From: Salpingoeca rosetta
Taxonomy: Eukaryota > Protista > Choanoflagellata
Length of the DNA stretch: 64,000 bases
Assembly: GCA_033442325.1 (NCBI GenBank)
Contig: JAWQFM010000017.1
Location: 1,140,036 to 1,204,035, forward strand
Direction of reading: 5' to 3'
In this document: positions 1,417-25,415 of the stretch, in pieces
Layout: each line of letters starts with the position of its first letter
Numbering within the stretch: the first letter of the stretch is position 1
Notes under the pieces: generated by a model
What the model was told of the DNA's origin: nothing
Seen by the model: the letters and a program-made list of their open reading frames with translations, nothing else
The model's database searches: none
Translations under genes and position numbers: made by a program

Positions 1417-1516
1417 NNNNNNNNNNNNNNNNNNNNNNNNNNNNNNNNNNNNNNNNNNNNNNNNNNNNNNNNNNNNNNNNNNNNNNNNNNNNNNNNNNNN
1501 NNNNNNNNNNNNNNNN

Positions 1517-3957: not shown

Positions 3958-6900
3958 TCACACACGCATAACGCACACCTTCTCTCCCTCTCTCCCCTCC
4001 CCCTCCAGGTTGGCAAAGGTCGCATGCCCGTGTACTTGCGGTGCGTGGGAACACAGACGGGAACAGAGGTGGTGCTCAAGAACACATGGAACGGGATCAG
4101 CACGATCAACGAGGAAGAGTCCCTGCTTGTTGTCGAGAACCACATTGCATGCGACCCAGATCGTGAGTTGTTCACGCAGTATGTGCTGCAAACCAACTTG
4201 AAACACACCTTGAAACACGGCCTGCTGCCCGCCCTTCTGTGATTCTTGCCCCTGCTCCACCGTTTGTCCCACACACACATACACACACACACACATTGCT
4301 TGTCTTGCTCCTCTTTCTCATCACCCCCCACCCAACAAACACACACATGCACACATTACATCACCCAACACAACACCACCGCCAACAGCTGACCGCGTCG
4401 TGTTCTCGTTGAGCGCGAGCGCAACAAGCGTTGTGGAGGAAGATACACCCTCCATCACCTTCAACGTCAGCAGAACAGGGCCCACCGACGATGACGTGAG
4501 CGTTCGCCTGGCCGCCGTTGATTTCCAGGCCTCGCGCAACGCGGACTACACGCGCGCATCCGCCTCCCGGCTCATCACGTTCGCTGCGGGCCAGACTTGG
4601 GCGCAGGAAACCATCCCCATCCTGGACGATGCCTTTCCGGAGCTTGCAGAGTCGTTTGCGCTTGCCCTGACGCAACCGACCTTGTTGACAGGCTCTGGCC
4701 GCGAGGTTGTGCTTGAGGATGGTGCTGCCGTCGTCCTCATCACCATCCAGCCATCCGATGACCCGCACGGTGTCATTGCTCTCCGCAACCCCAACACCAC
4801 CATCGCCCTGACTGAGCCCCTCTCTGGTGCCACCACCATCACCATCCCGCTCGTGCGCACGGGCGGGACCTTTGGCTCCGTCACTGTGGACTGGATCATT
4901 GACGGCGATGCACAGACCCACGACTTTGACGCGCTGCAAGGGTCTGTCACCTTTGGGTCTGCGGAGGCCGCCGCCAACATCACCCTGCAACTGCGCGCCG
5001 ACAACCAGCCTGAGCTGCTGGAACAAAGCGTGTTCCGGCTGCTCACCGCGAGCAACGGCGCGACCGTTGACGCCGCAAGCGCAGCCCTCACCCTCACGGT
5101 TGACCCAAACGACGACCCACACGGCGTCGTCTACGTGCAGGCAAGCGAGCAGCAGCTCATCATGCACCACACTGGTCAACGCGCGCTGCGCATCCTTGCC
5201 CAGCGGTCTGCGGGCACGCAAGGCGCTGTCAACGTCACGTTCTCCGTCACCTTTGGCACGAGCAACATCATCAGCAACAACCTCGCCTGTCTGCAGCAGT
5301 TTATCATCGCCGACAGTGTCACCATCGCCATCTCACATGGCGCCGCCAGTGCAGAGGCAGTTCTTCCCTTCAGCGACACCGTGTTGCTGGAGCAAGGCGC
5401 CGGGTTTTGCCTGCAGGCAACGGCAGTCGCACTGGCAGATGGCTCCCCTGTCCTCGTGGCGTCGGATTCTTTGTCGCCTCGCCTCAACACATCGCGTGTC
5501 GACGCCCGCGTGGTTGTCGCGCGTGCGTTTGCCAACGGCGTGGTTGGCTTTGCCGGCACAAGCATCAACCAGGCAGAGCCCGCCACCCAGCAGCAGGACA
5601 TCACCATCCTGCTTGTGCGCTCTGGCGGTGGTTATGGTACACTTGACGTGCAGCTTTCTCTCACTGGGAATTCAGAGTACGCCGTGCCTGGCCAGGACGT
5701 GACCCTGTCATCTAACGTCTCCCACTTTGATGCTGGCGACTCCCTCCACGAGCTCACCGTCTCCGTGCACCCCGACAACATCCCTGAGCTTGCCGAACAG
5801 TTCTTCGTCACCGTGGCGGACATTCCGTCCGGCCGCGCCGCCATCGACTCGGACTCCTCTGTTCTCACCGTCACTGTCCCGGTGCGCTGAGATGATGACA
5901 TGGGTTGTTTTTGGAAGTGAAATGGATGTCTCGTGCTCCAATAATTTCCATACACACACACACACACCCAATTTGCATGCATCCGCTTGCACACAAACGC
6001 ACACACACACACTCACATGCACACACACACGTATACATACACACTCTCACAAATGCACATGCACACACATACACACTCACATAAACACATGCACACACTG
6101 TACTGCACTGCAGAAAAATGACGACGCAAATGGCGTGCTTGGGTTTGAGGTGACGGGCTACCGTGTGTCGGAGACGGACCCGAGCGGACATGTGGTGCTC
6201 AACGTGACAAGGACACGCGGGGCGTTCCAGTCTGTGAGCGTGGCGTTTGCCACGAGCGACGGCACGGCGGTGGCCGGGACCAACTACGAGGCGCAGAGCG
6301 GGACGCTTGTGTTTGGGGAAGGGGAGCGGAGCAAGGAGATTGCGGTTGGGGTGCTGGATGCGGGGGCACCGCGGGCGCCTGTGCGAACGCTGACGGTGAC
6401 GCTGGGACAAGTGATTGGCGGGGCGCGGGTGGCGGCCGCATCTGCCACAGCCACCGTCAACATTCAGTCCTGCCACCACTGCAGCTTCAACATCATCGAC
6501 TCGCCGTCCCCGCTCGTGACAGCGGAGCCAGCAGGCACCAACACGGCCGACGTGACGGAGGTGGCTATCCCTGTGCGGCGAACCCCAGACACCTTTGGGC
6601 CCGCCACGCTCCACTGGACGGTGTTTGAGAATGACCCTGCCACTGGCGACATCACTGCCGTGCAGGCGAGCATGGACTTTGTTGACGCCACTGGCGCGGT
6701 GTCCTTCGTGCATGGCCAGCAGGATGCCGTGGTTGTGCTGCACATTCGCAACGACAACGAGCCTGAATTGACAGAGCGCTTCAGCCTGGTGCTCGTCTCA
6801 GTGGACGGTGATCCATCGCTTGGAATCAACGCAACCCTGCCCATCGACATTGTTGCCAACGACCTGTGCTTTGGCAGCTTCTCGTTCTCGGCATACCCTG

Positions 6901-9900
6901 CGGCAGTGACTGTGTATGAGCCCCAGGACCCGTCCAGTGGTGCTCGCGTGCACACCTTCAACATCACACGTGCGCGTGGCACATTCAACAGCGTTCGTGT
7001 CTCGCTGGAGCTGCAACTCCTAACGGCAGGCGACAGCGCTGCAACAAGCGACGACGCTGTTCTGCTCACACCATCTGTTGTCTTCGCCGAGGGCCAGACC
7101 TCTGCTCTTGCGCGCGTCTCCGTCACCAACGACAACATCCCCGAGATTGCAGAGAGCATCATTCTGCGCGCAGCAAGCGTGGCTGTGCTCAACACAAACG
7201 AGACGGTCACCTCAGACCTCGTCACCATCGACGACACGGACGACTACATTGAACTGGTGATTGCGGAGAACGACGACGCGCGGGGTGTTGTGTCCATCCG
7301 CCCGCTCGCCCTCACTGCCAGTGAAGGCGGTGCGCCCTCCGATGTACAGTTCACCCTCACCCGCACACGTGGTGTGTTTGGCGTCGTCACGGTGACGGCT
7401 GGCCTCGTGTCAGTTGCGAGTGGCACTGCTGGCGTGAACGCAAGCAACGTCGCCACTCTCTCGGGCCCGGAGCAAGACGCCTTCCTTCCCATGCCCACTG
7501 TCACGTTTGTCGAGGGCCAAACCGAGGCTATGCTCTCTGTTGGCGTTGTGGATGACGACCTGCCGGAAGTGGACGAACAACTGCGCGTTGTCCTCGTCAA
7601 CACGACCGGTGGCCTAGTCGTCGGTGCCAACGACACGGCTGTGCTCACCATTGCTGCCAGCGACGCAGCGTTTGGCGACCTGTCCATCACCAACGCCTCC
7701 ACCCTTGCTGTGCTGCACGAGTTGGAGGGTGAGGACGCCATGTACGAGCTGGAGGTTCTGCGTGGTGGCGGTGATTTTGGCACCATCACGGTGGAGTGGC
7801 ATCTGGAAGTGGTCACGCCTGGCGACGGTGGTACCACGTCCTCACCCCTCGTCCTTGGCAGTGACATCTCCCCATCGTCTGGGACGTTGACGTTTGCGCC
7901 CGGTCAGCGACGCGCTGTGGTTGCGCTCACCGTGTACGCCGACAACATGCCAGAGACGAACGAGGAGGCCTTGCTCGTGCTGAGCAGCCCGACAAACGGC
8001 GCGCAGCTGCAGGCCAACGCCACGTCACGCCGGGTTGTGATTGAGGCAAACCAGGAGCCGCACGGCGTGGTCTCGCTGGCAGACGCCACCATCATCGTGG
8101 ACGAGGGCGCCGGCACGGTGTCCGTGGCCGTGACGCGCGAGAGTGGCGCCATTGGCCAGATCAGCGTCGATGTCACCGTGCGTGGCGTGTCCGCTGCGGG
8201 CGGTGGTGTGGATTTTGCAGCCACCAACACCACGCTGGTGTTCGCGCCGGGTGTTCGCCAGCTGGCGCACCCCATCACCATCATCGACGATGATATCCCA
8301 GAGCTGGACGAGACGCTGGTTGTGTCGCTCAGCAACCCCACGGGCGGCGCGCTGCTTGGCGCCATCACTCAGACAGAGATCACCATCTTCAACAACGACG
8401 ATGCGTTTGGGCTGGTGCGCGTCGCCAACACCACGCCCGCAGATGTCGCGGCGTTTGACGAGAGCGCAGCAGACAGCAGCATTGTGTTTACAATTGTACG
8501 CGATGCGGGCGCCTTCACCTCCATCTCCGTGCCCTGGTCCCTGCAGCAGGTGGCCGGGTCATCTGCCGCCACGCCCGATTTCGATGTCACCGCTGGTGTC
8601 GTGCAGTTTGCAGAGGGCGAGCGTGTTGCCACCATCACCGTGCACGTGCTCGATGACGACGTGCCCGAGGACGACGAGACGTATCAGCTGGTGCTCAGCA
8701 GCGTCACTGGCAGTGCGCGCGCACATCCGCAGCTTGGTCGCCACAACGTCACCATCGCTTGGAACGACAACGCCTTTGGCATCATCAGCGTGCAGGCGGG
8801 CGCGCGCAGCCAGCGCGTTGCTGAGAGCGATGGCAGCGTCTCCATTCCTCTGCAGCGCACGCAGGGCACGTTCCGCCGTGTTGGTGTCAACTGGGTCATT
8901 GCCGTGGCCACGGTGAGCTCTGGTGACGTGAGCCCCACATCCGGCACCGCGTACTTCGAGCCCGGCAGCGACACCGCCGCCATTGTCATCTCCATCACAG
9001 ATGACGCAATACCAGAGGTTGACGAAGGGTTCACAGTGAGCCTGCAGAGCGTCACCGTTGCCGGTGCCCTGCTTGTGTCCGATTTGAATGCTCTGCGTGC
9101 AGATGTCACAATCGTTGCCAACGACGACCCGCACGGCGTGATCAGCCTGCGCAGCGGCAGCGGCACGCTTGCGCTGACCAGCGGTGGCCTGCGCTCACTC
9201 CGCGTGACACTCGACCGCAGCGGTGGCACCATCCTTCCCATCGACATCACCTTCTCCGTGCTCATGTCACTGCCGCCTGGTGGCGTACAAGCCAGCAGTG
9301 GCAGCGGCGGCGGTACAGCAGAGCGCTCTCCCTGCCAGGCCCAGACCATCGTGTCCAGCCCGCAGACGGTGACCATGGGCGACAAGCTCGCGTCACGCGT
9401 CGTGAGCCTGCTGATTGAGGAGACGGCCGTGCTGGTGCAGGACGCCGTGTTCTGCATTCAGCTCGACTCTGTCGTGCTCTCCCGCGATGGCTCGCACACC
9501 AACACAAGCACGGGCCCGTCACCAAGCTTGGCGGCGTCCATGGATGCCCGTGCACTCAACGTGTCTGTGAGCAGTGCGTATGCCAACGGCCTTGTGGCCT
9601 TTGGCGACACTGCGGGGACCGTGCACGTGACGGAGGCAGCAGACCTTGACGCACCCGAGACACAGCTTGTGCCTGTGGTGCGGAGCGACGGCAGCTTCGG
9701 CGATGTGGCACTGGCGTGGGAGATTGTGCCCTCACACACGGGTGACTTTGACGCTGTGAGTGGGACCGTGATGCTGCCGTCTGGGCAGTCGTTTGCGTCC
9801 ATTCCCATCACCGCCGTGAAGGAGCAAGTGCCAGAGCTTGACGAGCTGTTTCAGCTGCGCCTGACGGGCATCACCAGCGGTACAGCAACGCTGGGCGCCG

Positions 9901-12283
9901 GTGTCAACGACACACGCGTGCAGCTGCTCATCCCCGCCAACGATGATCCGTTTGGCGTGCTTGGGTTTGAGGTGACGGGCTACCGTGTCTCGGAGACAGA
10001 CCCGAGCGGACATGTGGTGCTCAACGTGACAAGGACACGCGGGGCGTTCCAGTCTGTGAGCGTGGCGTTTGCCACGAGCGACGGCACGGCGGTGGCCGGG
10101 ACCAACTACGAGGCGCAGAGCGGGACGCTTGTGTTTGGGGAAGGGGAGCGGAGCAAGGAGATTGCGGTTGGGGTGCTGGATGCGGGGGCACCACGGGCGC
10201 CTGTGCGAACGCTGACGGTGACGCTGGGACAAGTGATTGGCGGGGCGCGGGTGGCGGCCGCATCTGCCACAGTCACCGTCAACATTCAGTCCTGCCACCA
10301 CTGCAGCGTCTTCCTTGATCCTACGCAGGACCTGTTTGTTGGCGAGGAGCCTGCATCCCCTGATCCCGCCGATGCCACAGGCATTGACGTGCGTGTCCTG
10401 CGACAGCCAGACAGCTACGGCTCTGCGCTTGTTGGCTGGCGGGTGGTGCATGCAGGCACCAACACGCTTGCAAGCGACGACTTTGTGGATGCCAATGGCA
10501 CGGTGACGCTGGAGCACGGGGAGACCGAGACGACGCTCCGCCTGCTGCCGCGCGCTGACGCCACCCCAGAAACAGCGGAGGCATTTGAGGTTGAACTCAC
10601 CAGCGTGAGTGGGGACCCGTCTCTCGGCAGTGACGATGTGCTGGAGCCTGTCACGCGCAATGTGCAGCTTGAGCCCAGCGACCAGCCGTATGGGTTGTTT
10701 CGTATCGGCACCGCATATGTGCGCGACGGCAACAGTGGCGCGGTGAACTCTGTTGCCGGTACTGCCGATTCCGTGTCCACACAGGAAGGCGACACGGTGC
10801 AGGTGACCATTGATCGGCAGCACGGCACGCTCGGCGCTGTTGACGTGTACCTGATGCTGCTGTCCCTTGCGGGCGAGGTTCCTGCCGACAACGCTGCAAC
10901 CCCTGGCGATGACATTGCTATTCTGCACAGTGCTGGGATTGGTGCTGTTCGGTTCGCAGATGGGCAGACGCGTGCCAACGCAACGCTTGCCATCATCGAC
11001 GACGGCCTGCCTGAGCTGGACGAGCGTCTGGTGGTCGCCCTGTTGAATGCCACCATTGTCGGAGACACCCTAGCAGCGAGCATGGATGCGCGGCGTGTGC
11101 GTGTGTCCAACACGACGCGTGAATCTGGCCTCACCATTGCTGTCGAAGAGAACGACGACGCACATGGGGTGTTTGAGCTCTCTGCACCGTCCCTCGCCAA
11201 CGAAACGTTGAGCGAAGGTGCCGTGGCCACTGTGACTGTTGAGCGCAGGCGCGGCACGTTTGGCGCTGCTGGTGTCTCTCTCGTGCTTTCTTCAGTTGTT
11301 GATGACGACAACACGGCGACAACGGACGCTGTGCTCTCGCAAACAGACATCACATTTGTGGAAGGCGAGAGCTCTGTGCAGGTGACCCTGACCGTCCTGG
11401 ACGATGCTGTGCCCGAGGATACAGAGTCGTTTGTGCTGTCCTTGTCTGCGGGCAGCGTGACTGGCGGTGCGCGGCTGTCACCAAACGCGTGGGCCACACA
11501 GGCGGCGTTCTCAGTTGCGCCCAACGATGATCCCTTTGGCGTGTTCACGCTCGCGCAGCCGCTGTACAGTGTGGACGAGCCAGCCAACGTCACTGTCACG
11601 GTGCTGCGGTCTGCTGGACTGTATCGCACCGTGTCCATCCCGTGGCAGGTGAATCAGAATGCCACATCTCCAGATGTCGCACCAAGCAGCGGAGTGGTCG
11701 TGTTCGTGCCGGGCCAGACAGAGGCGTATGTGCAGCTCACTGTCATCGATGACAGTATTCCTGAGGACCGTGAGGACGTGGTATTCACGCTGCAAGCGCC
11801 CACGTCGCCCGTTGCACGCATCGAGCGCAACACCACCACCATCCGCATTGCCGCCAACGACTTTGTCAACGGCGTGCTTGAGTTTGAACCTGGTCTGAGT
11901 GTGCTACGTGTGGGCGAGGACGTGGGCTTGTTTTCCATCACCGTGCGCCGGCGTGGCGGTACGCAGGGCACCGTGTCTGCGGCGTACGAGACGCTTGACC
12001 TGACTGCAACGCGCAGCAGCAACGACTACGCGTATGCCCAGGGCAGGGTGGAGTTTGCGCCTGGCGAGACGGAGCAGACCATTTCCCTCATTGTGGTTGA
12101 CGATGACGTTCCAGAGGATGATGAGCGGTTTCTTCTCGTCCTCTCTGACGCCCAGGGCGGCGCCGTTCTTGGTCTCTCCTCCCAACGTAAGCACGCGCGC
12201 ATGTGCGTGTGTGTGTGTTTATGTTCGTGTTGGTGTGTGTGTGTGTGTTGTGCTTGTGTGTATATGTGTGTGGTTGTGCTTGT

Positions 12284-12314
<31 letters not shown>

Positions 12315-15300
12315 GTAGTGCGTGTGTGTGTATGTGGACACGCTCATGTGGACACGCTCATGCGTTATGCGTTCCTTGGTTGCATCATCTCACACTTACA
12401 TTCACACCATCACCTTCCCACCACCCCTACCCATCACTCCCCCCCCCAAACAAAACCAAACACAGTTGAAGCTGAGGTTGCTGCGTCGGAGCGGGCCAAT
12501 GCCGCTGCTGTTGCCGCAGCCGATCTGGTCACGCTGCGCGAGATGCAGGTGACAAACCTCTCGGCAAATATCACTGCGCTCGAAGCAAAGCTGGACCGCC
12601 TTGCTGATGCCATTGCCAGCAACGAGACAAGCGCTGATGCTGTTGCTGCAGACCTTGCTTCCGCACGTGCGCTCCTGGCAGAGGAGAACGCCAACCTGAC
12701 TGCGGCACAGACACTGGCGCAGCAGCGGCAGGCCAGCCTCCAGGCAGCCTCGTCCGTGCTGGACTCCGCGCTGGCCACACGCACGTCCATTGCAGAGCAG
12801 TTGGATGACGCCACGACGGCGCTGAACTCCGTGGTCCGACGCGTGGTGGACTTCACACAGGAGCCAGACACCATTGATCTGGCTGCACAGCTGCCGGCGC
12901 CGGAGAGCGAAATCGAGTACTATGCTGGCCTTGTTGTCACCGCCGTGTACTACACGCAGCCAGACAGCCCCACACCCCGCTCCATTGCTGTGCGCGAGGG
13001 GCTTGGCTTTGGTGTCGTTGGCTCCGCCTGTGGCGGCACGTGCTTCACGGGACTGCACGAGGTGCGACTGGCATTCAACACCACCGTCTCCAACGTCGTG
13101 TTTGAGAACAGCTTCACAGACTCGGAGGAGCCCCTCGGGCCTCTCGCTGTCACCATCTATAACCTGGATGGCACCGCCATCGACACCGCCATGATGCAGC
13201 GGGACGCCGTGTTCAACAACGCCTACAACATCTCTGCTGCGTTCCCCGGCGTTCGCATTGGCGGCTTTGCCGTGCAGGCAACCGACTCGATTGTGCGCTT
13301 TGCCTCTGTTTCCTTTGATCAGGTGGAGGGTGGCAGCTATGAGGATGCGCTTGCACGCGTCAACACGTATTCGTCACAGCTCTCCGCTGCCGATGTTGCC
13401 GTGTTTGACGCCCAGCAGCAGGCAGGGCTCGCCGCCCAGGCCTACGTGCAAGCGGCTGCAGCGTTGTCGCAGCAGTCTGCAGAGACAGCGGCAGCACAGC
13501 AGCAGGAGCAGACGCTCAGCCAACAGGCCAGCGCACTCAACGCCACGTTGCTCATGTTGCGCACGGACAGCCGGCAAACCCAGTCCCTGCTCAACTCGCA
13601 GCGCCAGCGCTACGCGGACCACACCTTGCTCCTGCAACAAGCCGAGAACGAGCTCATCCAAGCGCAGGAGCAGGCAGACCAGCTGGCCGCTGCCGTGACA
13701 GAGGCGCAGCAGGCGGCCGTGTGCCCTGACCTGCAGTGCGTGTCCAGCATCACCGTGGAGATTGCACACAACGATGATGCCTTTGGCGTCTTCTCCATCA
13801 ACGCGACTGCGGCTGTGGCCTCGGCCACCGCAGGCGAGGGCCAGGCCTTTGTTGTGCCCGTCGTGCGTGCTGCCGGCACCTTCCGCGCAGTCTCACTGCA
13901 GTGGCGCCTCAACTTTTCCTCCACAGCGTCACCAGCAGACATTGCTGCGCCCACCACGGGAGCACTCACGTTCTCGTCGCGTCAGACGAGTGCTGAGCTT
14001 GTGCTTCCCATTGTTGACGACGCAGTGACAGAGGAAGCAGAACACCTGAGCGTGATCTTGACAAATGTGTCCCTGGGCCGGGTTGAGGACCCCAGCTCGC
14101 TCACACTCACCATCGACGCCAGCGATGCCGTTGGCATCTGCACCCCAACATCGTGCGCCAACAACGCCACATGCGTGGATGGCGTGTTTGACGTCACGTG
14201 CCTGTGCCAGCCTGGTTTCGCCGGCGACCGCTGCGACATCAACATTAACGAGTGCGCAAACGTGACCTGTTTCAACGGCGGTACCTGCGCGGACCGGATT
14301 AACGACTTTGACTGCGCGTGCATCAATGGCTTCCAGGGCAAGCTGTGCGAAATCTCACCGCTGTGCGACCAGGGCGAAACCTGGTGCTTCCGCAGCAACG
14401 CGTGCGTGCACACCGCCATCTCGCAGCAAACATGCCAGGTGCCGTGCGACAGCGAGACGCACGTGTTCTGCTTTGCGTCCCAGACGTGCCGCCCCCGCGT
14501 CGTTGCTGACATGCCATGCCCCGTTCCTGGACCCGCGCCGCTCATCACAGCACCGTTCGCCATCAGCGTCGCCGAGGACACGGCTGTGCTCACGTCGCTG
14601 GCGAGCGTGTACGCCACCCCGCGGCACCGCTGGGGTGAGAACATCACCTACTTCATCGAAGATGTAGGCATGGGCGGCGGTGCTGCTGGCGACGTTGCCA
14701 ACACAACGGTTGCTGGCCCCTTTGCCATTGACACGCTGACCGGTGTGATCTCCCTCGTGGGGCTCTTGGATCGGGAGCAGGTGGACGCGTACACGCTCCT
14801 CGTGACTGCTGTCGACTCTGCACCAGACCACAAGACAAACAGCACCACCGTCACAGTGGTGGTGACCGACGTCAACGACAACAGCCCCACGTTCGCGCCC
14901 GCCACCCCAACCGCGGTATCCGTGCTGGAGAGCGCGTCTGTGGGCACACAAGTCGCGCAACTGGTGGCGAGTGACCCGGATGCAGGGGCCAACGGCAACG
15001 TGCGCTTCACACTTGACGCCGGCAACGCACTGGGGTCATTCCAGCTCGACTCGTCATCTGGTGTGCTCAGCGTTGCTGGCACGTTGGACGGCGATCAGCA
15101 GACGTCGTACACGCTCACCATCTCCGCACACGACCAAGGAACACCTCCGCTCACAACCACAACAACGCTGGAAGTGAACGTGGTCGTGTACCCACCACCC
15201 GCCTTTACAGACGGAGGCAGCTACACAGCAGGGTTCCCTGAGGAGGCAACAGGGCTGGTGGTGCGTGTTAGCGCTACAGTCCAGCACCCGTACAGCAACG

Positions 15301-18300
15301 ACGCCGTGATGTACGCCGTTGTGTCTGCGGAGACAAGCGAGGGTGATGACGTGACTTCACATGTTGGCGTCAACAGCACCGGGCACATCCACGCCACGCA
15401 GGCACTGGACCGCGAAAGTTACGCGTTTGTCGTTGTCACTGTTGCTGCCACAGATTTTGCACCGCTGCGCAAGACCTCGCTGGCTGTTGTGAACGTGACG
15501 GTGGTGGATGTGAACGACAATGCGCCCGTGTTCGACAGCAGCGTTGCAGATGGGGTGCTGGTGTTCGTGCGGGAGGAGGACGCGCCAGGCACCCTGGTCA
15601 CAGACGAGCTCACGGCACAGGACGCGGACCAGGGCGACAACGCCCGCATCACGTACAGCATCGTGAGTGGAAACACGGGCAATGCGTTCAGCATCGACGC
15701 AGACACGGGCGTGGTGACGCTTGCCGCACAGCTCAACGGCAGCGTTGTGGACGAGTACGTGCTTGGTGTTGAGGCGCGTGACAACGCGGCGCACGTGAGT
15801 GACCAGCTGTCTTCGGTTGTGAGCGTGAACGTGAGCGTGGTGTACTTTGGGGCGCCCGTGTTTGGGGCACCGTCGTACCGCGGGAACGTGAGCGAGGACG
15901 CAGGCGTGGGGACGGGTGTTGTGCGTGTGTGTGCGACGGCACAGCACGACGGAGCAGACCAAGGGATTGACTTTGCGATTGTGAGCGGGAACGTTGGGGG
16001 TGTGTTTGGGCTTCGCATGGGCAGCGACAACGTGAGCGCGGAGGTGTATGTGGCGGGGCCGCTGGACCGCGAGACGCGCGGGGTGTATGTGCTTGGGGTG
16101 GTTGGGCGGGACCGAGGCCCGCTGAGGAAGCGGAGCGGGGTGGGCGTGCGTGTTGATGTGCTTGATGTGAACGACCACGTACCGGTGGTTGTGGGTGCCG
16201 ATGGCGGGGAGAGCGGTGGGTGGCCCGAGCCTGTTGTGCGGATGGAGGTGCGCGAGGAGGCGAGCGTTGGGAGCGTTGTTGGGGTGATTGTGAGCGAGGA
16301 TGGTGATGCTGGAGCGTATGGGACGGTGACTGTGTCTGTTGGTGCGACGCGTGTTGGCGGCGGGGACTTTGGAGGGGTGTTTTCGCTTGACGGCGGGAGC
16401 GGGCGGGTGCTCGTTGCTGGCGTGCTTGATGGGGCTGAGACGCCCGAGTATGTGGTTGAAGTGATTGCGCGGGATGGCGGGGGCCTGACCTCCAACGCCA
16501 CCCTCATCATCACCGTCATCTACTTCAACGGGCCCCGGTTCAACGCCACTTCCTACGCTGCAACAGCAGCGGAAGACGTGGTTGTAGGTGCCACCATCGT
16601 CAACGTCTTTGCGGTTGCGCGTCACGACCAGCTAGATCGCACCATCGACTACAGTCTCGCAGACTCGCTTGGACTGTTCGACGTGACTGCTGATGGCCGC
16701 ATTGTTGCTGCTGCGCCACTTGACTACGAGACAGCCACATTGCACGAACTGACGGTCGTGGCGACTGATCACGGCCCATTGCGCAAGTCCAGCAACGTCA
16801 CTGTCGTGGTCACTGTGACTGATGTGAACGACAATGCACCCGAGTTTTCGCCGCCCTCCTACACATTTACCATTCGGGAAGACGCGAGCGAAGGCGTTGT
16901 TGTTGGCAGCGTGAATGCGTTTGACCTTGATTCTGGCGCCAACGCCGCTCTGCACTTTAGCACCGACTCGCCCGCATTTGCTGTTGCTTCGCCCTCAAGC
17001 AGCGGTGTCACGACCGTTGACGTTGTGGTGACGGCATATGGGGCTGTAACCCTGGACGGCCTGCAAGAGCCAACAATTACCTTGACAGTGACTGCCAGGG
17101 ACGGTGGCAGCCCTGCCCTCTCCTCCACGGCGACAGTGACCATCGATGTGACGCTTGTGCCGACGGTGCAAGCGCCATACTTGAAGCTGTACAACACGCT
17201 CAGCGCAGCGTCTGGGTTTATCCCAGCCGAGTTTAGCAGAGACGTGTCGTCGCTCGCGCTGGTGTCGGACTTTGACACGCGTCACGGCGTGTGGGACATC
17301 AGCGTGGATGACGGGTCCACGTGGACACGTGTCAACACTGGCGCGCGATGGCGTGACAACACGGCGCTCGTGCTGCGGACGGGGGAGAGCAGCAGCACTC
17401 TGTTGCGGTTTGTGCCCACGGAAGGATTTGCTGGCGTTGCCACGGTGCATGTGCGTGCGTACAACGGGGACAACGCCACCATCACTGGCGCTGCTGCAGG
17501 TGCTGCTGCCGATGCACTCGTTGACGTGGGCGCAAGCCCCGATACCTTGCATGATGTCAGCGGCAATACCGCCCTGGGCGTTGTGTTCGTCGCCGCCCCG
17601 CTCAGCAGCGTGCAAGTTGCAGAGAGCACGAACGTGACCGTGGACCTGCCAAACCTGCTTGAAGACACATCGCTGCTGCAGAATGTCGGCGTGCAGCTGA
17701 CATCACTCCTGCAAGGTCACCTGCAATTTGCCACGGTGAGCGGCCCCGCGACGGGCATGGCTGCGCTCACCACTGGCGGCTGCGATGGTACCGGTACATG
17801 GTGTAACAGCACGGCCGTTGCTGTGATGTTCCCAGACGATGTCGACACGCTCGTGCAGCCGCGCGATCACGGCATCGTCGTTGAGAGCGTATCGGAGAGC
17901 GCCGGTGTGTGGCAGAGCCGAGCAGCGTCCGTGACTGGGTTTGAGGAGACACTTGTAGGCGATGTGGTGCCGCTGCAGTCGCTGCTGCGGTTTGTGCCGG
18001 CGGCAGAAGAGAATGGTCTGTTTGAGATGGTGGTGCGCGGGTGGCATGGAAAGCTGCATGCGCTCGCACGGCAAGCGAGCACGACAGCCCACACCATCAC
18101 CATTCGCCAGAGTGTGGTCGCAGTTGCAGATGCCCCACGTGCGCTGACTGCGAACGTGACGCTGGCGCCCGTGCCATACGAAGTGACAGCGCAGACGGCG
18201 AACGGATCGCGCGTTGACGAGAGCATTGCTGGGCATGCGGTGGATGCAGATGGGCAGGCCATTGGCCTTGCTGTTGTTGGCGTCGCAAACTGTATCACAA

Positions 18301-21300
18301 CAACAGCCACAGCAACAAGCAGCAGTAACGGTGACAGATGCCGCGGATCGTGGCAGTATCTGCTTGATTCGACGCAGGAGTGGCGTGCGTTCCCACTGGA
18401 TGCCAGCGACCAGAAGGCGGTGCTGCTGGCGCCCCACTCGCGTGTGCGCTTCGTCCCACTGCCCAACTACTTCTGGCCACGCGGCAATGCCTCGGTGTGG
18501 CTGCGTGTGCGCTACTGGGATATGAGCGTGGGCCGAGCCGGTGACACGGCTATGCTTGCAGACGCCTCGGCACCGCAGCAGCTGCTGTTCCCAACAGCCT
18601 TCAGCAGCCGCGTTGTGAGCGTGTTTGTGGACCGCCTTGGCTGTGACGGTGAGGTTGGCAGCCAGCTGTCCGTCGATGCGTGCGGGGTGTGCGGCGGAAA
18701 CGGCAGCGCGTGCGCTGGGTGCGATGGCGTGCTTGCGTCCAATGTGCAGGAGGATGCGTGTGGGGAGTGCGGTGGTGATGGCTCGTCCTGCATGGGGTGC
18801 GACCTTGTTCCGCTGTCCAATGCGCAGGTGGACGAGTGCGGCATCTGTGGCGGTCAGAACCTGAACAAGGACTGCGCTGGCGTGTGTTTTGGGGTGGCGT
18901 CGCGAGACGACTGTGGCGCCTGCTTTGGCGGAGACGCAGAGCGCCAAACACCCGACCTCGACAAGGATTGCGATGGCGTGTGCTTTGGCGCTGCGTTTGT
19001 GGACGACTGTGGCGCGTGTGTTGAAGGCGCAACGGGCCTGAGTGCCAACTACAACAAGGACTGTGCTGGCGTGTGTTTTGGTGGCGCGCAGATCAGCGAC
19101 GTGTGTGCGCTGCAAGGCGTGTCGTATTGCGGTGAGCCCGTGCTCGACTGCAGTGGTGAGTGCTTTGGTTCCCGTATCGTGTCGAGCTGCGGTGATTGCG
19201 TGCAGCCGGACAACGCGACGCTCCTTGACTGCGCCGGCGTGAGTGGCGTGACACCTCGTGTCGTGCCCGTATCCTCTGCCTCTGTGCGCTTCACAATCGC
19301 TGGGAGCGGTTTCCCGCCAGATGTCGGCGCACGCGACGTGACCTGCCGTGCCGTCAGCAGCAGTGGCCGTGGCAGCGTCACTGGATATGGGTGGGTGGCG
19401 TCTTCGACCACGATCACGTGCGTGTTCTCGACGCTGACCGTCGGTGATTATGACCTTGAGGTGGAGCTGCACGGGTCTGCCCTGTCATCGTCACCATCAT
19501 CATCATCATCATCGTCACTTGCCGTTGCTGTGGTGAGTGATGCTGCATCTGTTGGCGCCCCGCCCACGACCAACGTCAATGCGTTCCCTTACGACACGCA
19601 GACGTTCAACCTCTTTGCCGTGACGCCGTCCTCTGCCCCACTTGCCAATTTGAGCGAGGCCGTGGACGCTATTCGCGTGTCCGGCGCGCTGTCGTCGTTT
19701 GGCCCTGCAGACGAGACCACAGGGTGCCTGTTTGTGACGAGTGACACGGGCCTGCTCGGTGTGGTCTCTGGGCAGTGGTTTGCGCGGCGTATCAACTGCG
19801 TCGCTGGGCCGCTGCAGTTTGCGCGACAGATTGAGATTGACATTGAGGATGACGAGCAGCAAGCGTTCACCACGCTGGATGCTGTGGAGAGCCACCTGCG
19901 CCAGGCCCGCCCCGACATTGCCAGCGTCACCTTCACTGTGAGTGGTGATGGCGACGCGGCCTCGGGCAAGCCGCTGCCCACCGGCAGCAGCGTGCTGGTG
20001 GAGTTCTCAGCGGACCTGAACCAGATTGCGTGCTTGGAGGCATCGATGGCCACCATCAACGCCCTGTTTGGCCTCTTCCCACGCGTCTCCAGTGGAAGTG
20101 CTGGAAGTGCTGCTGATGCTGATGCAAATGCGGTCCCCACGCTTGTTGGCAGTGACGTCCTGTCACTGTCATCTTCCGAGGTCGTGTGTGCCGTGCCTTC
20201 AGTGCAGCGCTCAGCGACCATGGAGGTGATGCTGGTGCACCAGGGTGTGGTGGCGGCTGCTTCAGGCACCACGCCCACTGTCACGTTTGTGCACCGCGCT
20301 GCACAGGCCAGTGCCCGCTTCTCTGCCTCTGGCCGCCACCTTGTGGTTACGTTTGACGTTGGCGTGCTGCCTGTGGAGCCGTGTGCCGCAGTGTTCACGG
20401 CGGCATCACGGAGCGCGCTGGATGCAACCGCGTGCACGTGGACGACGCACACACTGACCGTTTCCCTGGGCCGCAACGCAACCCTGCTGCCTGGCGACCG
20501 CGTGTGGTTTGCACCTGTGGACACCAGCGGTGATGTGGCAGCGGACACCCTCAGCACAGGCGCAGGCATTCACGTGGCCGGTGAGCTGCACAGCTACGCC
20601 GTGTCTGGGTCTGTCGTCGTTGGCCTGCCTGATGACTACCAGCCCTCCATCCCCCGCTTCACGCTGCCGCAACAAGTACGGGCGTGCGCAGGGCTGCTGC
20701 TGGATGCCAGCGCATCACACGTGGCAGCCGGGCGTCCAGCCACGTTCCACTGGAGTGCACTGGCCCACGGAGGCGAAGATACGACCGCGCTTGAAGCGCA
20801 CCTTGCCAGCGTGTCTGGTAGCAGCGATGGCCCTGAAGGCGTCGTGGTGGAGGTTGCAAGTTCCCTCCTGCGTGCGGGCACAACATACACGTTTGGCTTG
20901 GCCATTGAAGACGCGCTGGGCGTGCGCAGCAGCGTCGTTACGGTGGACACGACGGTGATGGTACAGGGCAGCGTTGGCGGTGGTGCACAACAGGTCGCGT
21001 CGCTTGAGATCCTTGGTATTCCGCCTGTCCTGCATGCGTCGTCAGATCTCACCGTCCGTGTGCGCCCCGTTGCGCCGCTGCACGGGAACACGTGTGCGGG
21101 CGAAAGCCTTGGCACAGCGATTGCTGCTGCTCTTGGTGCTGCGAGCGGCACCAGCGCAGATGTGCAGTACTGCTGGCAACTCTCGCCGGCCCGCGCGTCC
21201 AATGGCGGAGCGCCGCTGGCTGTTGCTTCTGCATGTGCGCCAACACCGTGGTTTACAGTTTCGGGCACACTGCTGCTGCCCCATCAGCAGCACACGCTGA

Positions 21301-22888
21301 CGGTGACGGTGCGAGTGACATCGGAGGATGCCGAGGCACCCGTGCTTGCGTCCACCAGCACCGTGTTTGACGTCGTGCCAACGCCGCTTGAGGCGAGCGT
21401 GCTTGGCGGTGACTTGCTGGGCGGGCGGCGCACGGTGCCATTGGACGCCACCATCAGCTTGGATGCGTCTGTGTCCTCTGATCCCGACGCCACGGACGAG
21501 CTGGAGCTGTTTGGCTGGCGGTGCGAAGACATTGCCCTGAGCCAGCCATGCAGCACGACAGCAAACGGCAATGTGCCCAGCGTGCTGCTCTTCCCTGCCA
21601 CGCCGCAGCTGTCGCAGGCTGCGGCAGACTTTGGTGCCGGCAGCTACCGCTTCACGGCCACGTATCGCAAGGGCGGCCGCTTTGTGGACGCACGCGCCGT
21701 GGTGGAGGTGGTGGAAGCGCCAGTCGCACCCCAGCTGCGCGTGTTTGGGGTGGCGCAAGGGTATGTGCCCACGCCCACAGAGCACGTGTTCCTGCCCCAC
21801 GCCGTGGTCAACCCGTCCCTGCCCGTGACGGTTGTCGTGGAAGTGACACACGCGTCCGCGCTCGCATCTGCGACATGGTCCGTGGTCGCCGACAGCAGCA
21901 GCGGCAGCGGTGGGAATGAAGATGAGGAGCCGTTGGCGTGGCTTGACTTGGAGGCAACCGCTCTGACGCCACTCACGTACACGCAGGCAGAATTGGCTGC
22001 ACTGGTGACGTTGGACGACGGCACCCAGCGCACGTTCCTGCAGCTCACCCTGCCCCCAGATGCTGTCGTGTCTGGCGCAACGTACCGCTTTAGGTGCACG
22101 GCAGCGACGGCCGCTGAGCACGGGTTTGCCGAGGCGACGGTGGTGGGCAACCACGTGCCGTCTGGTGGCGCCCTGGATGTGGTGTCGTGGACAATGACGA
22201 ACAATGGCATGGGCGTGACACGCGCTCGCCTGACTGCTCAGGGCTGGGGTGACGCTGACCTGCACTATCCGCTGATGTATCGCTTTGGCGTTGGCGCTGA
22301 CCCAGCCACGCGCGTGTGGCTGACGACGTTTGATTACAGCAGTCGCCTCTCTGGTGTGGTGCTGCCTGCTCCCGCAAGCAACACCACCACGCACGTGTCT
22401 GTTGTGCTGCAGGTGCGCGACAGGCTTGGGGCCACCGCGGAGTCGACGGTGGAGGTGGCGACCAGCACAGCAACAACAGCCGGCACAGGAACAACCCCAT
22501 CGGTGGATGCGGCTGCGTTGGCAGCCAACGTGAGTGCTGCGTTGGACGCCGGCAACTGGCCGCTGGCGGTGCGTGTTGGCGTTGAAGCTCTGTGGATGAC
22601 AGGCGACTCCACAAACGCTGCAGTGGTGGTGGACACGGTCGCCGGCGTTGTCTTGGACAGCGTGCGCGCTGCCCTGTCGCTTCAGTCTGGCTCCTCATCG
22701 TCTTCCTCCTCTGCCTCTTTGACAGACGGGGAAGCAGACTTGTTGCTGTCAGCAGTGGCTGTCGTTGCAAACAGGCGTGCGTTCCTGTCCGAAACAACAC
22801 GCGGTCGTGTGGGTGAGTTGACGGAACACATTGGCGCCATCCTCATTCCGGCTGCGGAGGAGGAAGGCCTGCTCAACAGCAACAACAA

Positions 22889-22919
<31 letters not shown>

Positions 22920-25415
22920 CGGAGGAGGGCGAGCGGCGCTGTGGATGGCGGGTACGGCAGCAGCAGCAGCGTCACGCCCCAGCAGGGCCTTGCGATGACT
23001 GACATTTATTCGAGCGCCATTGCGCTTGACTCGTTCACGGCCACCAACGCCGCCCTCAAGGCGCGGCTGAACACACTGCTGCAAGTGATTGCGCGCGTGG
23101 AATGTCGTCGCCTGTCCTTCAAGGCACGGCCGTACCAGCTGGAGAATGACCTGTTCCACTTGGAGGTTGCCGTGCTCTCTGGCGCCAGCGTGCAGACTGT
23201 CGACACGACGCAACTCGACTACGGCAGCGACTTTGAAGCGCGCTTCGAGCGGTGGGCGTGCGATGACCCCGCCCCTGCAAGCCGGTGCGCTGGCGTGTGC
23301 AGTGCCGCTGTTCTCTTCAACGCGGACATGACAACGGCGTTTCAGGACGAGCCTGCGTTCCGTCGCGCGAGCCCGCTGCTTGACATGCGCTTCTACGACC
23401 AGACCTCCTTGCACACGGTGCAGGTTGCGTCGCTTGACCCGGCGCTGTCGCTGTTCCTGCCCATCACCGAGGCAGCGCCAGCTGGCACGACAGACAGTTC
23501 ACCTCAGCGTCGCAGAAGGAGCAGCAGTAGCAGCAGCAGCAGCGATGACGTGGCTGCGCACGACCGCGTGAACACACCACATGTCGTCACCAGCAGCAAC
23601 GTTGACAGCAACAGCAGTAGCAATGGCGCGAGCAGGGATGGGAGCGATGCTGTGCGCGTGCGTCGGGAAGGCCCCTCTGTGTCAGCACCGGAGTTTGAGT
23701 GTCTTGTGTATGACGCGTCGCAGCATCTGTGGTTGGCGGATTCCCGCTGCAGCTACTTTGCGCCCAACACGGGGGAGCAAGGCGTGGACCAGCTTGAGTG
23801 CCGCTGCACAGCTGGTAACCTACAGGTGGCCGGGTACTACTACGCTTCCTCAACGACGGGCGAGGTGAATGTCACGGTGCCAGCAGCACCTTCAGGTGAC
23901 GTGCTTGCCTACCACCTTCGCGCGTACACATACGAAACGGAGACGAATGCCGAGTCTGCGGCGTGGCTGACGGGCTTTGTGGGCACATTCTACCAGTCCA
24001 TGGTGCAGTTGCTCTCCCTGCAGGACAGTCAGGTGGCAGGCGTCGAGGTTGTGTCTGTCATCAACGGCACGGGCAACCGGCAGACGCTGGTGGTGGACTT
24101 TTATCTCGTTGAGCCTGACGGCAACGGCGGCAATGCGACGGTGCTGGACGGGTATGTTGAGGACCTCAACACCTTGATTGACACGCGCCAGGCACGGTTC
24201 GTGTACGACTCCACGACGTTTGAGCTGTACAACGTGACCATGGTGTCTGGTGGCGGAAACACAGGCGGAAGTGGCAGCAGCGGCTCGCTCGGTTCTGGCT
24301 TCTGGGTGGGCATTGCGTTTGCCATTGCCGCCGCCCTGGCCATGCTCGTGGCGCTCGTGCTGCTGCTGCAGGGGCGAATTGGCGGACGCGAAGGAAAGGC
24401 GAAACTCGGCGGCAAGAGCGTGGACGACGAGAGCACGCTGGAGATGGTTGATCTTGGACGGCGGTCGCTTGCCGCGTCGTCCAACACCAGCAGAAGGTCC
24501 TCTGTTGCGCAGCTGCTGCCGCGGTTCATGCGACGCACCAGCAGCGTGGTCATGCCGGAGCAGCTGGTGGAGGTGGACGAGGAAGGCGAGGAGGACGAGG
24601 GCGCGCAACTCACTGGCGACGACGCACGTGATCAGGTGGCCCAAACCGCCTCCACGCGCCTTGCATGGACACGGCGCTCATCCTTGTCGACAATGGCCAC
24701 GGCTACAACAGCAGCAACAGGCGCTGGTGACGGTGACGGCGAGCATCAAGTGAGCGGGGGTGCTGCTTCCACTCCTGCAACTACACCTGCGCGCCGGCTC
24801 TCCGTTGCATCTGCGACGTCACCGCAAGTGGACGAGACTGAATTCAGCAAGGGCGGCAGCAGCGATCGCACTGGTGGTGGTGATGATGATGATGATGGCG
24901 CCAGCGGCACGCACGGGGCCGCACTGCCTTTCTCTCCGCGAAGCAGCGCGTCTTTGGGTGGCGATGGCCAACAACAACAACAACAACAACAACAACAACG
25001 ACAGCGGCAAGACCCGCTGGCACCACTGACATCCACGACAACACCACCTCGGGGCATGCCTCCACGTGTGCCGCGACTGCCGTCGTCGTCATCATCATCC
25101 TCGTCGTTGTCGGCTGCGCCTGGTGGAACTGTGCCCGCACCGTCTGCTCTGACACTGCGACCAGCCCTTCGCGTGCCGTCGCTGCGATCGCGACAAGGCC
25201 CCGGTGGTTCTGAGCCGAGCACGCCTGGTACGCTGCCGCAGTTGCGCCCAGGCATCCGCGCACCACAGAGCTTGCCACGGCTGCAGCCACGTGCGCTCCC
25301 TCGCGTCAACCGTCCACCGCCGCCGCGTCGGCCATCCCAACAGCAGCAGCAGCGAACAGTGGTGGCACCGATTCCGGAGGAGAGCGATGCTGATGCCAAC
25401 GAATCCCAGGCATGA
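3075..25415 (+). CDS. Giant (~7,000 aa) type I membrane protein: Calx-beta repeats, EGF, cadherin repeats, Cys-rich repeats, IPT, REJ/GAIN-GPS-like region, single TM
   Basis: Proposed exons 3075-3177, 3428-3669, 4009-4162, 4389-5881, 6114-12186, 12466-25415 (all GT-AG, 21,015 nt = 7,004 aa + stop). Signal-peptide-like start (WLSTLLLVLGVFSSLLTTA). About 21 DDxxPExxE / NDDxxG Calx-beta repeats; 2 EGF (CANNATCVDG..., DINECANVTC...); DxNDN/LDRE cadherin motifs; REJ motifs (LDASVSSDPD, YPLMYRFG); TM FWVGIAFAIAAALAMLVALVLLL at ~24300-24370. The three small 5' exons are less certain than the rest. Confidence 0.85.
6131..6485 (+). repeat. Intragenic direct repeat, copy 1 (355 bp, one Calx-beta domain)
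   Basis: Near-identical to 9953-10307; about 4 substitutions seen by eye. Confidence 0.95.
9953..10307 (+). repeat. Intragenic direct repeat, copy 2 (355 bp)
   Basis: Near-identical to 6131-6485; offset 3,822 nt. Confidence 0.95.

What the first reader, a model, noticed from the sequence alone, without database searches (positions are those of the whole stretch)
14545..17160. Eight cadherin repeats with strictly alternating Ca2+-binding and Ca2+-free linkers
Seen: odd repeats carry LDRE/LDYE and end in DVND(N/H), and the following even repeats carry AxDxD-type motifs (ASDPD, AQDAD, SEDGD, AFDLD), giving a full canonical linker. Even repeats have LDG/LNG and end in YPPP, YFGAP or YFNGP with no DxNDN. 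Odd repeats replace AxDxD with a His motif (ATPRH, ATVQH, ATAQH, AVARH). Known: Ca2+-free linkers bend Drosophila N-cadherin, Fat/Dachsous and PCDH15. Inference: four rigid two-domain units joined by hinges, a zig-zag or extensible spring, possibly modulated by pH or metal through the conserved His.
Basis: partly seen in the sequence, partly recalled or inferred. Interest (0 to 1): 0.72.

Follow-up and report, generated by a model that had tools for sequence, protein, structure and literature searches.

The report
Cadherin doublets with alternating calcium-free joints
A giant surface protein of the choanoflagellate Salpingoeca rosetta has eight cadherin repeats arranged as four calcium-clamped pairs joined by three calcium-free joints, and two relatives keep the same pairing with more pairs, so this looks like a natural modular stalk with regularly spaced special joints.

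Summary
Window 14535-17180 (+) encodes eight Pfam cadherin repeats inside one exon of a 7004-aa S. rosetta protein (Calx-beta array, EGF, 8 EC, REJ, one TM). Scoring ten canonical Ca2+ ligand positions per linker gives 10,4,10,3,10,4,10.

The pattern is inherited as a two-repeat unit. Odd repeats form one clade, and the odd/even split is the most extreme of all 35 possible partitions. The Monosiga brevicollis orthologue has 16 repeats with 15 strictly alternating linkers. A third relative, on a contig from a public run, has at least 14 alternating repeats.

The Ca-free joints carry their own conserved signature. The linker is aromatic and proline-rich and two residues shorter than a canonical one. 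An invariant His replaces the second Asp of DXD, usually followed by Asp, and there is an invariant Lys in a GPLRK-type loop.

AlphaFold models place this joint with high confidence in a non-canonical orientation. The fit to canonical crystal pairs is 6.5-8 Å, against 1.6-2.9 Å for this protein's own canonical pairs. The joint is not L-shaped like PCDH15 EC9-10.

Hinge, spring and pH or metal roles are untested. Weaker period-2 linker patterns also occur in other giant cadherins. Verdict: new variant of a known kind, moderately interesting.

The parts
12465..25412 (+). Annotated exon of the S. rosetta gene that holds the whole cadherin segment (context)
   Evidence: P0001 aligns at 99.98-100% to ORF residues 2247-6562 without a break. 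P0001 is 100% identical over 100% of the cadherin region.
14535..14894 (+). EC1, odd type (His motif ATPRH, LDRE, DVNDN)
   Evidence: Pfam; boundaries; motifs
14895..15206 (+). EC2, even type (ASDPD, LDG, ends in the Ca-free linker VYPPPAF)
15207..15533 (+). EC3, odd type (ATVQH, LDRE, APLRK, DVNDN)
15534..15863 (+). EC4, even type (AQDAD, LNG, ends in VYFGAPVF)
15864..16190 (+). EC5, odd type (ATAQH-D, LDRE, GPLRK, DVNDH)
16191..16541 (+). EC6, even type (SEDGD, LDG, ends in IYFNGPRF)
16542..16847 (+). EC7, odd type (AVARH-D, LDYE, GPLRK, DVNDN)
16848..17180 (+). EC8, even type and last repeat (AFDLD, LDG, no DXNDN at its end)
14868..14882 (+). Canonical DXNDN linker EC1-EC2 (ligand score 10/10)
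15507..15521 (+). Canonical DXNDN linker EC3-EC4 (10/10)
16164..16178 (+). Canonical linker EC5-EC6 (DVNDH, 10/10)
16821..16835 (+). Canonical DXNDN linker EC7-EC8 (10/10)
15186..15206 (+). Ca-free linker EC2-EC3 (score 4/10)
15840..15863 (+). Ca-free linker EC4-EC5 (score 3/10); modelled by AlphaFold with pLDDT 94-97
16518..16541 (+). Ca-free linker EC6-EC7 (score 4/10)
15273..15287 (+). His motif of EC3: His at the position of the second Asp of DXD. The equivalent motifs are at 14613-14627 (EC1), 15933-15947 (EC5) and 16611-16625 (EC7).
   Evidence: invariant in alignment A2
16113..16130 (+). GPLRK-type F-G loop of EC5 with the odd-type invariant Lys. The equivalent loops are at 14817-14834 (EC1 variant), 15456-15473 (EC3) and 16770-16787 (EC7).

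Best explanation
The segment is a periodic stalk built from a two-repeat module.

Within each module (odd EC to even EC) the linker has the full canonical ligand set. In sea water it should therefore hold three Ca2+ and be a stiff rod about 9 nm long.

Between modules (even EC to odd EC) the Ca2+ ligands are replaced by a protein-only joint with three parts:
- A linker two residues shorter than canonical, of the form hydrophobic-x-[Y/W/F]-F-x-x-P-x-F.
- An invariant His, usually followed by Asp, where DXD would be.
- An invariant Lys in a GPLRK-type loop, next to the retained Asp of XDX and the retained Glu of XEX.

This joint is ordered and sets a fixed orientation different from a canonical cadherin pair. 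The array is therefore a kinked or twisted (zig-zag or superhelical) rod rather than the usual smooth arc.

The module is the unit of evolution and of length: 4 modules in S. rosetta, 8 in M. brevicollis, at least 7 in a third relative.

Shown: the repeats, the motif alternation, the parity clades and the conservation across lineages. Inferred from sequence: the absence of Ca2+ at the joints. Inferred from AlphaFold models only: an ordered, non-canonical joint geometry. Not addressed: the ligand or cellular role of the whole protein.
For: - Eight cadherin repeats by Pfam.
- Ligand scores are 10,4,10,3,10,4,10 in S. rosetta and 10,3,10,2,10,2,10,2,9,1,10,2,10,3,10 in the M. brevicollis orthologue P0122.
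- A third relative (P0171 on contig L031) has at least 14 alternating repeats. Its downstream ORF is collinear with S. rosetta residues 3850-5069 (27% identity, E 4e-58).
- Odd repeats form one group (support 87/90), and the odd/even split appears in 100% of bootstrap trees. The permutation test agrees.
- Junction-specific invariant residues in ten even-odd pairs are F105 (nearly invariant), P108, H138, D139 (nearly invariant) and K199.
- His and Lys at these two positions co-occur in only 1 of 4,834 background repeats. In the second set of 1,384 repeats they co-occur only in the relative P0171.
- The AlphaFold model of the EC4-EC5 pair has pLDDT 89.7 and pTM 0.75, with 94-97 across the linker.
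- Internal control: the canonical pairs of the EC1-4 model fit crystal pairs at 1.6-2.9 Å (2wcp, 5wj8, 6bwn, 5wjm). The Ca-free pair fits the same crystals at 6.8-8.1 Å.
- A toy rigid-body calculation puts 6.5-8 Å at about 50-60 degrees of bend or about 95-120 degrees of twist.
- Within the S. rosetta genome, the three own junction pairs score 234-248 bits. The next-best pairs score at most 150 bits, and those I inspected have canonical linkers.
Against: - No structure, Ca2+-binding or mechanical data exist.
- The AlphaFold alignments had only 10 sequences, coordinates and PAE were not available to me, and the model lacks ions. The geometry is therefore a prediction of unknown accuracy.
- Solved Ca-free linkers are bent or mobile (PMC8427231, PMC5120219), so order here is not guaranteed.
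- Three or four acidic ligands survive at the S. rosetta joints, so a partial or non-canonical cation site is not excluded.
- The tree of modules is unresolved except for the last module.
- No RNA evidence could be obtained.
Confidence: 0.6

Rival explanations
1. Flexible hinges or an extensible spring. The three Ca-free joints are mobile or force-openable elbows, so the array is a chain of four stiff rods that can fold and extend, as proposed for PCDH15 EC9-10.
For: Known Ca-free linkers bend or are mobile. LI-cadherin EC2-3 is more flexible than canonical linkers in MD (PMC8427231). PCDH15 EC9-10 is bent and unbends under force in simulation (PMC5120219). DN- and DE-cadherin bend at such linkers (PMC8325961). 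The predicted joint geometry here is non-canonical.
Against: The joint is predicted with very high local confidence and pTM 0.75. The linker is shorter than canonical and rich in Pro and aromatic residues, and its residues are invariant over three lineages, which suggests a packed interface. The model is far from the PCDH15 elbow (14.5 Å) and from the DN-cadherin jack-knife (37 Å). A packed joint that opens under load would reconcile this reading with the main one.
Confidence: 0.22
2. Neutral legacy of duplication. A two-repeat ancestor with one degenerate end was copied in tandem. The alternation is only inherited and has no mechanical meaning.
For: Parity clades and module-wise copy-number differences show growth by two-repeat duplication. 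Weaker period-2 patterns occur in other giant cadherins.
Against: Modules have diverged to 30-40% identity with no DNA-level repeat left. Even so, every one of the 3 + 7 + at least 5 junctions keeps the same junction residues, and every intra-module linker keeps 9-10 of 10 ligands. That points to purifying selection on both linker types.
Confidence: 0.1
3. A different ion or a proton sits at the joint. His, the following Asp, the retained XDX Asp and the XEX Glu form a non-canonical metal site or a pH-sensitive latch in place of the three Ca2+.
For: The His is invariant and the neighbouring Asp nearly so. The XEX Glu and XDX Asp are retained at joints that have lost the other ligands.
Against: There is no direct evidence. 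An invariant Lys in the same region could instead neutralise the remaining acids without any ion. His would be mostly neutral at sea-water pH (general knowledge). I had no coordinates to check whether these residues are even near each other.
Confidence: 0.08

Closest known systems
LI-cadherin (CDH17) EC1-4, PDB 7CYM
   Same: Two canonical Ca2+-bound doublets (EC1-2 and EC3-4) are joined by a Ca2+-free EC2-3 linker. The doublet arrangement is attributed to an extra EC1-2 added to a five-repeat precursor (PMC8427231).
   Different: LI-cadherin has one such joint, not a periodic series. There is no His, Lys or aromatic-Pro signature. The EC1-4 model here fits 7CYM only at 13-15 Å. LI-cadherin's joint is reported as mobile unless locked by dimerisation.
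Protocadherin-15 EC9-10, PDB 4XHZ / 5KJ4
   Same: A conserved Ca2+-free linker with a packed protein-protein interface that fixes a non-straight geometry (PMC5120219).
   Different: PCDH15 uses a 3-10 helix and an FG-alpha loop and is bent about 90 degrees. The model here fits it at 14-14.5 Å. It is a single joint in the chain.
Drosophila N-cadherin EC2-3, PDB 3UBH (the class of Jin et al. 2012)
   Same: Canonical ligands are replaced by uncharged residues at a complete Ca2+-free linker (as cited in PMC5120219 and PMC8325961).
   Different: DN-cadherin jack-knifes at about 80 degrees. The EC1-4 model here fits 3UBH at 37 Å. The original paper was not available to me, so I could not check whether its survey noted periodic cases.
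Cadherin-23 EC12-13, PDB 5VH2
   Same: It is the best geometric match to the modelled Ca-free pair among solved structures (5.4 Å over 196 residues, Z 16.3).
   Different: It is still far from a true match, since canonical pairs fit each other at about 2 Å. It is one irregular linker in a 27-repeat chain.
Period-2 arrays in other giant cadherins (Branchiostoma Fat4-like P0043, P0070, P0074; unnamed P0004, P0073, P0132, P0133)
   Same: Two repeat types alternate, and so do the linker scores: 10,7,10,7... or locally 10,0,10,5,10,3,10.
   Different: In most of these the weaker linker keeps DXD and a VNE-type motif, so it is probably still Ca2+-binding. The pattern covers only part of the array, and there is no His/Lys signature.

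Membership tests
Cadherin superfamily (EC repeat) | Match to Pfam PF00028 above the gathering score | tested here: met
   341 bits against a cut-off of 28.8, in 8 stretches
Cadherin superfamily (EC repeat) | EC beta-sandwich fold | tested here: met
   AlphaFold models match cadherin crystal structures at Z 16-24. Canonical pairs fit at 1.6-2.9 Å. These are predicted models, not solved structures.
Cadherin superfamily (EC repeat) | Canonical inter-repeat Ca2+ site set (XEX, DRE, DXNDN, DXD, XDX) | tested here: met
   10 of 10 ligand positions at EC1-2, EC3-4, EC5-6 and EC7-8. The other three linkers score 3-4 of 10.
Ca2+-free interdomain linker class (DN-cadherin EC2-3, PCDH15 EC9-10, LI-cadherin EC2-3) | Loss of DXNDN, DXD and DRE ligands at a linker between two intact EC repeats | tested here: met
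   EC2-3, EC4-5 and EC6-7 lack DXNDN and both DXD Asp residues. DRE is reduced to LDG or LNG. The same holds at 7 of 7 such linkers in P0122.
Ca2+-free interdomain linker class | No Ca2+ bound in an experimental structure | not testable with these tools
   Needs crystallography, ITC or native mass spectrometry
Ca2+-free interdomain linker class | Bent or flexible interdomain geometry | tested here: inconclusive
   The predicted orientation is non-canonical (6.5-8 Å against 1.6-2.9 Å for the controls). It is confidently ordered and unlike the known elbows (14.5 and 37 Å).
Classical cadherins | Catenin-binding cytoplasmic domain (Pfam PF01049) | tested here: not met
   Pfam finds no such domain in the C-terminal 1,344 residues; only REJ is found.
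Fat / Dachsous giant cadherins | 27-34 EC repeats followed (in Fat) by EGF and laminin-G domains | tested here: not met
   Only 8 EC repeats, preceded by Calx-beta and EGF and followed by REJ, with no laminin-G. Identity to Fat-like proteins is about 30%, the generic level for EC repeats.
7D (LI/Ksp) cadherins | Seven EC repeats with an extra N-terminal EC1-2 doublet and a short cytoplasmic tail | tested here: not met
   Different repeat number and surrounding domains. The resemblance is in the principle only.
REJ/GPS-containing surface receptors (context of the whole protein) | REJ domain before the membrane span | tested here: met
   PF02010, E 7e-23. A single hydrophobic span is visible near the C-terminus in the translation. 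A GPS motif was not tested here.

The most novel reading that the evidence does not exclude
The His-Asp, Lys, Glu and Asp cluster that replaces the three Ca2+ at each even-to-odd joint is a switchable latch gated by protons or a transition metal. The array would then be a periodic, tunable spring whose length and compliance are set by the number of doublets (4, 8, at least 7). That would be a mechanical design principle for cadherin stalks that predates animals.
Probability: 0.1. Interest if true: 0.8.

Novelty: new variant of a known kind. Interest (0 to 1): 0.55.

Why it matters
Ca2+-free cadherin linkers are known as isolated irregularities that bend or soften a chain. Here they recur with strict period two along a whole array. 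They carry their own conserved sequence signature, and the two-repeat module is the unit by which the array grows in different choanoflagellates.

If the predicted fixed, non-collinear joint is real, it shows that cadherin rods of defined shape can be built without Ca2+ at every joint. It also gives a simple natural system of 4, 8 or more identical joints for measuring what one Ca2+-free joint contributes to stiffness and extension.

It shows too that this kind of linker diversification existed in the unicellular relatives of animals.

The weaker period-2 patterns seen in amphioxus and unnamed giant cadherins suggest that doublet organisation may be more general than is appreciated.

Tried and rejected
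Expression and the exon structure rest on the public annotation only.
- Jin et al. 2012 (PMC3271863) and Nichols et al. 2012 (PMC3420208) are not held. I could not check whether either mentions periodic Ca-free linkers or this protein family. Full-text searches found no paper on alternating Ca/Ca-free linkers.
- A search with the 882-aa segment alone returned only generic cadherins at 32% identity or less. The exception was the fragment P0171, which I found by motif scan, not by rank.
- The tree of two-repeat modules is unresolved apart from Sr_U4 + Mb_U8 (91/87). The order of duplications cannot be given.
- Foldseek TM-scores alone were uninformative until the VIA comparison gave an internal control. 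The ESM Atlas shape search found no two-domain match above TM 0.56.
- There is no DNA-level repeat beyond the DVNDN codons, so recent duplication or an assembly artefact is rejected.
I redid it by reference.
- I did not use the large representative-protein search, because no claim here rests on the absence of relatives.
- I considered and rejected that the junction type is common in S. rosetta cadherins.
- I considered and rejected membership in the classical, Fat/Dachsous or 7D cadherin families.


Full report
**What is there**

The window carries a 19.7-kb open frame, 5727..25415 on the plus strand. Its product is 100% identical over the region of interest to a 7004-aa protein of Salpingoeca rosetta. 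That protein is annotated, misleadingly, as 'NOTCH2 protein' (P0001).

Pfam gives this order of domains: about eleven Calx-beta repeats, EGF, eight cadherin repeats (E 6.2e-104), a weak TIG match, and REJ. One hydrophobic span lies near the C-terminus.

The annotated protein aligns without a break from window 12465 to 25412, so the cadherin segment lies in a single exon. No spliced model had to be searched. The whole-frame reference used contains one unspliced, stop-free intron (12186-12464). The residues scored in those calls lie wholly inside the exon.

**Checking the observation**

- EC1 14535-14894
- EC2 14895-15206
- EC3 15207-15533
- EC4 15534-15863
- EC5 15864-16190
- EC6 16191-16541
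- EC7 16542-16847
- EC8 16848-17180

All quoted motifs are present at the stated repeats. I scored ten canonical ligand positions per linker, using an HMM alignment of the repeats: XEX Glu, DRE Asp and Glu, the four DXNDN positions, both DXD Asp residues and the XDX Asp. The seven linkers score 10, 4, 10, 3, 10, 4, 10.

**Is it more than chance?**

- Repeats of the same parity are 36% identical on average, against 28% across parity. Of the 35 ways to split eight repeats four and four, odd/even is the most extreme. It remains so when all Ca-motif and linker columns are removed.
- In a tree of the 24 repeats of S. rosetta and its M. brevicollis orthologue plus six generic repeats, the 12 odd repeats form one group (87/90). 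The odd/even split is recovered in all bootstrap trees. Even repeats sit with most of the generic cadherin repeats.
- There is no DNA-level repetition beyond the DVNDN codons. The copies are old and are not an assembly artefact.

**Relatives**

I searched with the non-repetitive region just downstream of the cadherins. This found M. brevicollis MONBRDRAFT_11395 (P0122, 7041 aa), which has 35% identity over 99% of that region and the same Calx-beta, EGF, cadherin and REJ content.

P0122 has 16 cadherin repeats. Its 15 linkers score 10,3,10,2,10,2,10,2,9,1,10,2,10,3,10.

A motif scan of further hits picked out P0171, a fragment on an 11.5-kb contig from a public run of unknown organism (L031). 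Reading the contig in three frames shows at least 14 repeats alternating in the same way. They are followed by an ORF collinear with S. rosetta residues 3850-5069 (27% identity over 1,343 columns, E 4e-58).

So the two-repeat module is conserved in three lineages, with 4, 8 and at least 7 modules. Only the last module shows supported one-to-one orthology between the two named species.

Sponge and unnamed proteins that share the downstream region (P0042, P0123, P0039, P0081) have 33-39 almost entirely canonical repeats.

**How unusual is it?**

I scored 249 other cadherin-rich proteins (about 6,200 repeats and 5,700 linkers) in the same way:
- At most about 10% of linkers are Ca-free. This is an upper bound, because truncated alignments also score low.
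- The longest strict alternation is 6 linkers.
- No other protein reaches the score separation seen here across seven successive linkers.

Weaker period-2 patterns do exist, however. Branchiostoma Fat4-like proteins alternate 10,7,10,7 between a Cys-bearing repeat type with VNE-type linkers and a standard type. Some unnamed proteins have local runs such as 10,0,10,5,10,3,10. Doublet organisation is therefore not unique to this family. Complete Ca-bound/Ca-free alternation over the whole array is.

Within the S. rosetta genome, the three own junction pairs score 234-248 bits against a profile of even-odd pairs. The next-best pairs score at most 150 bits, and those I inspected have canonical linkers.

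**The joint itself**

Across ten even-odd pairs, the junction-specific conserved residues are:
- A Phe (nearly invariant) and a Pro (invariant) in a linker of the form hydrophobic-x-[Y/W/F]-F-x-x-P-x-F. This linker is two residues shorter than DXNDNxPxF in most even repeats.
- A His (invariant) where the second DXD Asp would be, followed by Asp (9 of 12 odd repeats).
- A Lys (invariant) in a GPLRK-type F-G loop.

The XEX Glu of the even repeat and the XDX Asp of the odd repeat are retained. The His and the Lys are also present in every readable odd repeat of the third lineage. The two residues co-occur in only 1 of 4,834 background repeats. In the second set they co-occur only in P0171.

By established knowledge of cadherin Ca2+ sites, these loop residues lie at the membrane-distal end of the odd repeat, facing the linker.

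**Predicted structure**

The EC4-EC5 pair was folded with the ten-pair alignment. It gave pLDDT 89.7 and pTM 0.75, with 94-97 across the linker. EC1-EC4 gave pLDDT 85.3 and pTM 0.55.

The four-repeat model supplies an internal control.

| Modelled pair or segment | Compared with | Fit |
|---|---|---|
| Canonical pairs of the EC1-4 model | Two-repeat crystals 2wcp, 5wj8, 6bwn, 5wjm | 1.7, 2.0, 1.9 and 2.9 Å over about 200 residues |
| Ca-free EC4-EC5 pair | The same crystals | 6.8, 8.1, 7.1 and 7.3 Å |
| Ca-free EC4-EC5 pair | CDH23 EC12-13 (best match) | 5.4 Å |
| Ca-free EC4-EC5 pair | PCDH15 EC9-10 elbow | 14.5 Å |
| EC1-4 model | Straight four-repeat crystals | About 9-11 Å |
| EC1-4 model | LI-cadherin EC1-4 | 13 Å |
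| EC1-4 model | DN-cadherin EC1-4 | 37 Å |

Three-repeat spans of the EC1-4 model that cross the EC2-EC3 joint fit crystals at 7.6-9.0 Å.

A toy rigid-body calculation equates 6.5-8 Å with roughly 50-60 degrees of bend or 95-120 degrees of twist.

Two independent models therefore predict an ordered joint that is neither canonical nor a sharp elbow. This is a prediction from shallow alignments without ions, not a measurement.

**Interpretation**

The best-supported reading is a modular stalk. Ca2+-clamped doublets are linked by Ca2+-independent, sequence-specific joints that set a fixed non-collinear orientation. Module number sets the length.

Three Ca2+ per canonical linker (stated in PMC8427231) implies about 12 ions per eight repeats rather than 21.

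PCDH15 EC9-10 is a packed joint that still unbends under load in simulation (PMC5120219). But the short Pro/aromatic linker, the invariance of the junction residues and the confident prediction favour order over looseness.

A neutral-legacy explanation fits the origin by duplication. It does not fit the retention of both linker types in every module after divergence to 30-40% identity.

A metal- or pH-gated role for the His is untested. The invariant Lys offers an ion-free way to balance the remaining acids.

**Known comparators and novelty**

Complete and partial Ca2+-free linkers are established in DN- and DE-cadherin, Fat/Dachsous, PCDH15 and LI-cadherin (PMC8325961, PMC5120219, PMC8427231). 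LI-cadherin is the nearest in principle: two canonical doublets with a Ca-free joint between them.

I found no paper describing a strictly periodic arrangement, this junction signature or this choanoflagellate family.

I rate this a new variant of a known kind. It is of moderate interest, and directly testable by structure, SAXS or AFM and force spectroscopy.

**Limits**

There is no expression data, no coordinates or PAE, only three lineages, and the organism behind the third is unknown.

Noticed in passing
window 12186-12464: A stop-free, in-frame intron made largely of TG/CA microsatellite reads as a Cys-Val run. This is why the raw frame stays open from 5727 to 25415. The annotated protein P0001 skips it, and its alignment to the frame starts at 6114.
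   Followed up: partly
window 6131-6485 and 9953-10307: A 355-bp direct repeat at 98.9% identity lies inside the Calx-beta array of the same gene. It is either a recent internal duplication or an assembly collapse or expansion.
   Followed up: no
window 1417-1516 and 36637-37553: Runs of N (assembly gaps). The second explains the GC dip at 36-38 kb in the composition profile.
   Followed up: yes
P0043, P0070, P0074 (Branchiostoma Fat4-like); P0004, P0073, P0132, P0133 (unnamed): Other giant cadherins show a different two-repeat periodicity. A Cys-bearing repeat type with VNE[F/H/Y]-type linkers (score about 7 of 10) alternates with standard repeats (10 of 10). Some unnamed proteins have local Ca-free/canonical alternation over up to 7 linkers. 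Doublet organisation may be a general theme.
   Followed up: partly
window 17181 to about 19200 (residues 3819-4500 of the frame): The region just after the cadherins matches bacterial-type giant adhesins (P0121, P0124; 38-39% identity over repeated parts; Pfam Big_9, Cadherin_5 and T9SS sorting tail). It also matches sponge cadherin-TIG-REJ proteins (Sycon P0042). This agrees with another first-stage note on this window.
   Followed up: partly
L031:2439-6317 (P0171): The third-lineage relative has an insert of about 140 aa, containing several Cys, between two repeats. It has a second insert of about 70 aa inside an odd repeat. These are either read-through introns or inserted domains.
   Followed up: no
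window 14535-14894 (EC1) and P0122 EC1: The first repeat has no cadherin repeat before it. Even so, it keeps the odd-type His, followed by Arg-Trp instead of Asp, in both species. The His may therefore also serve a contact with the preceding Cys-rich region.
   Followed up: no
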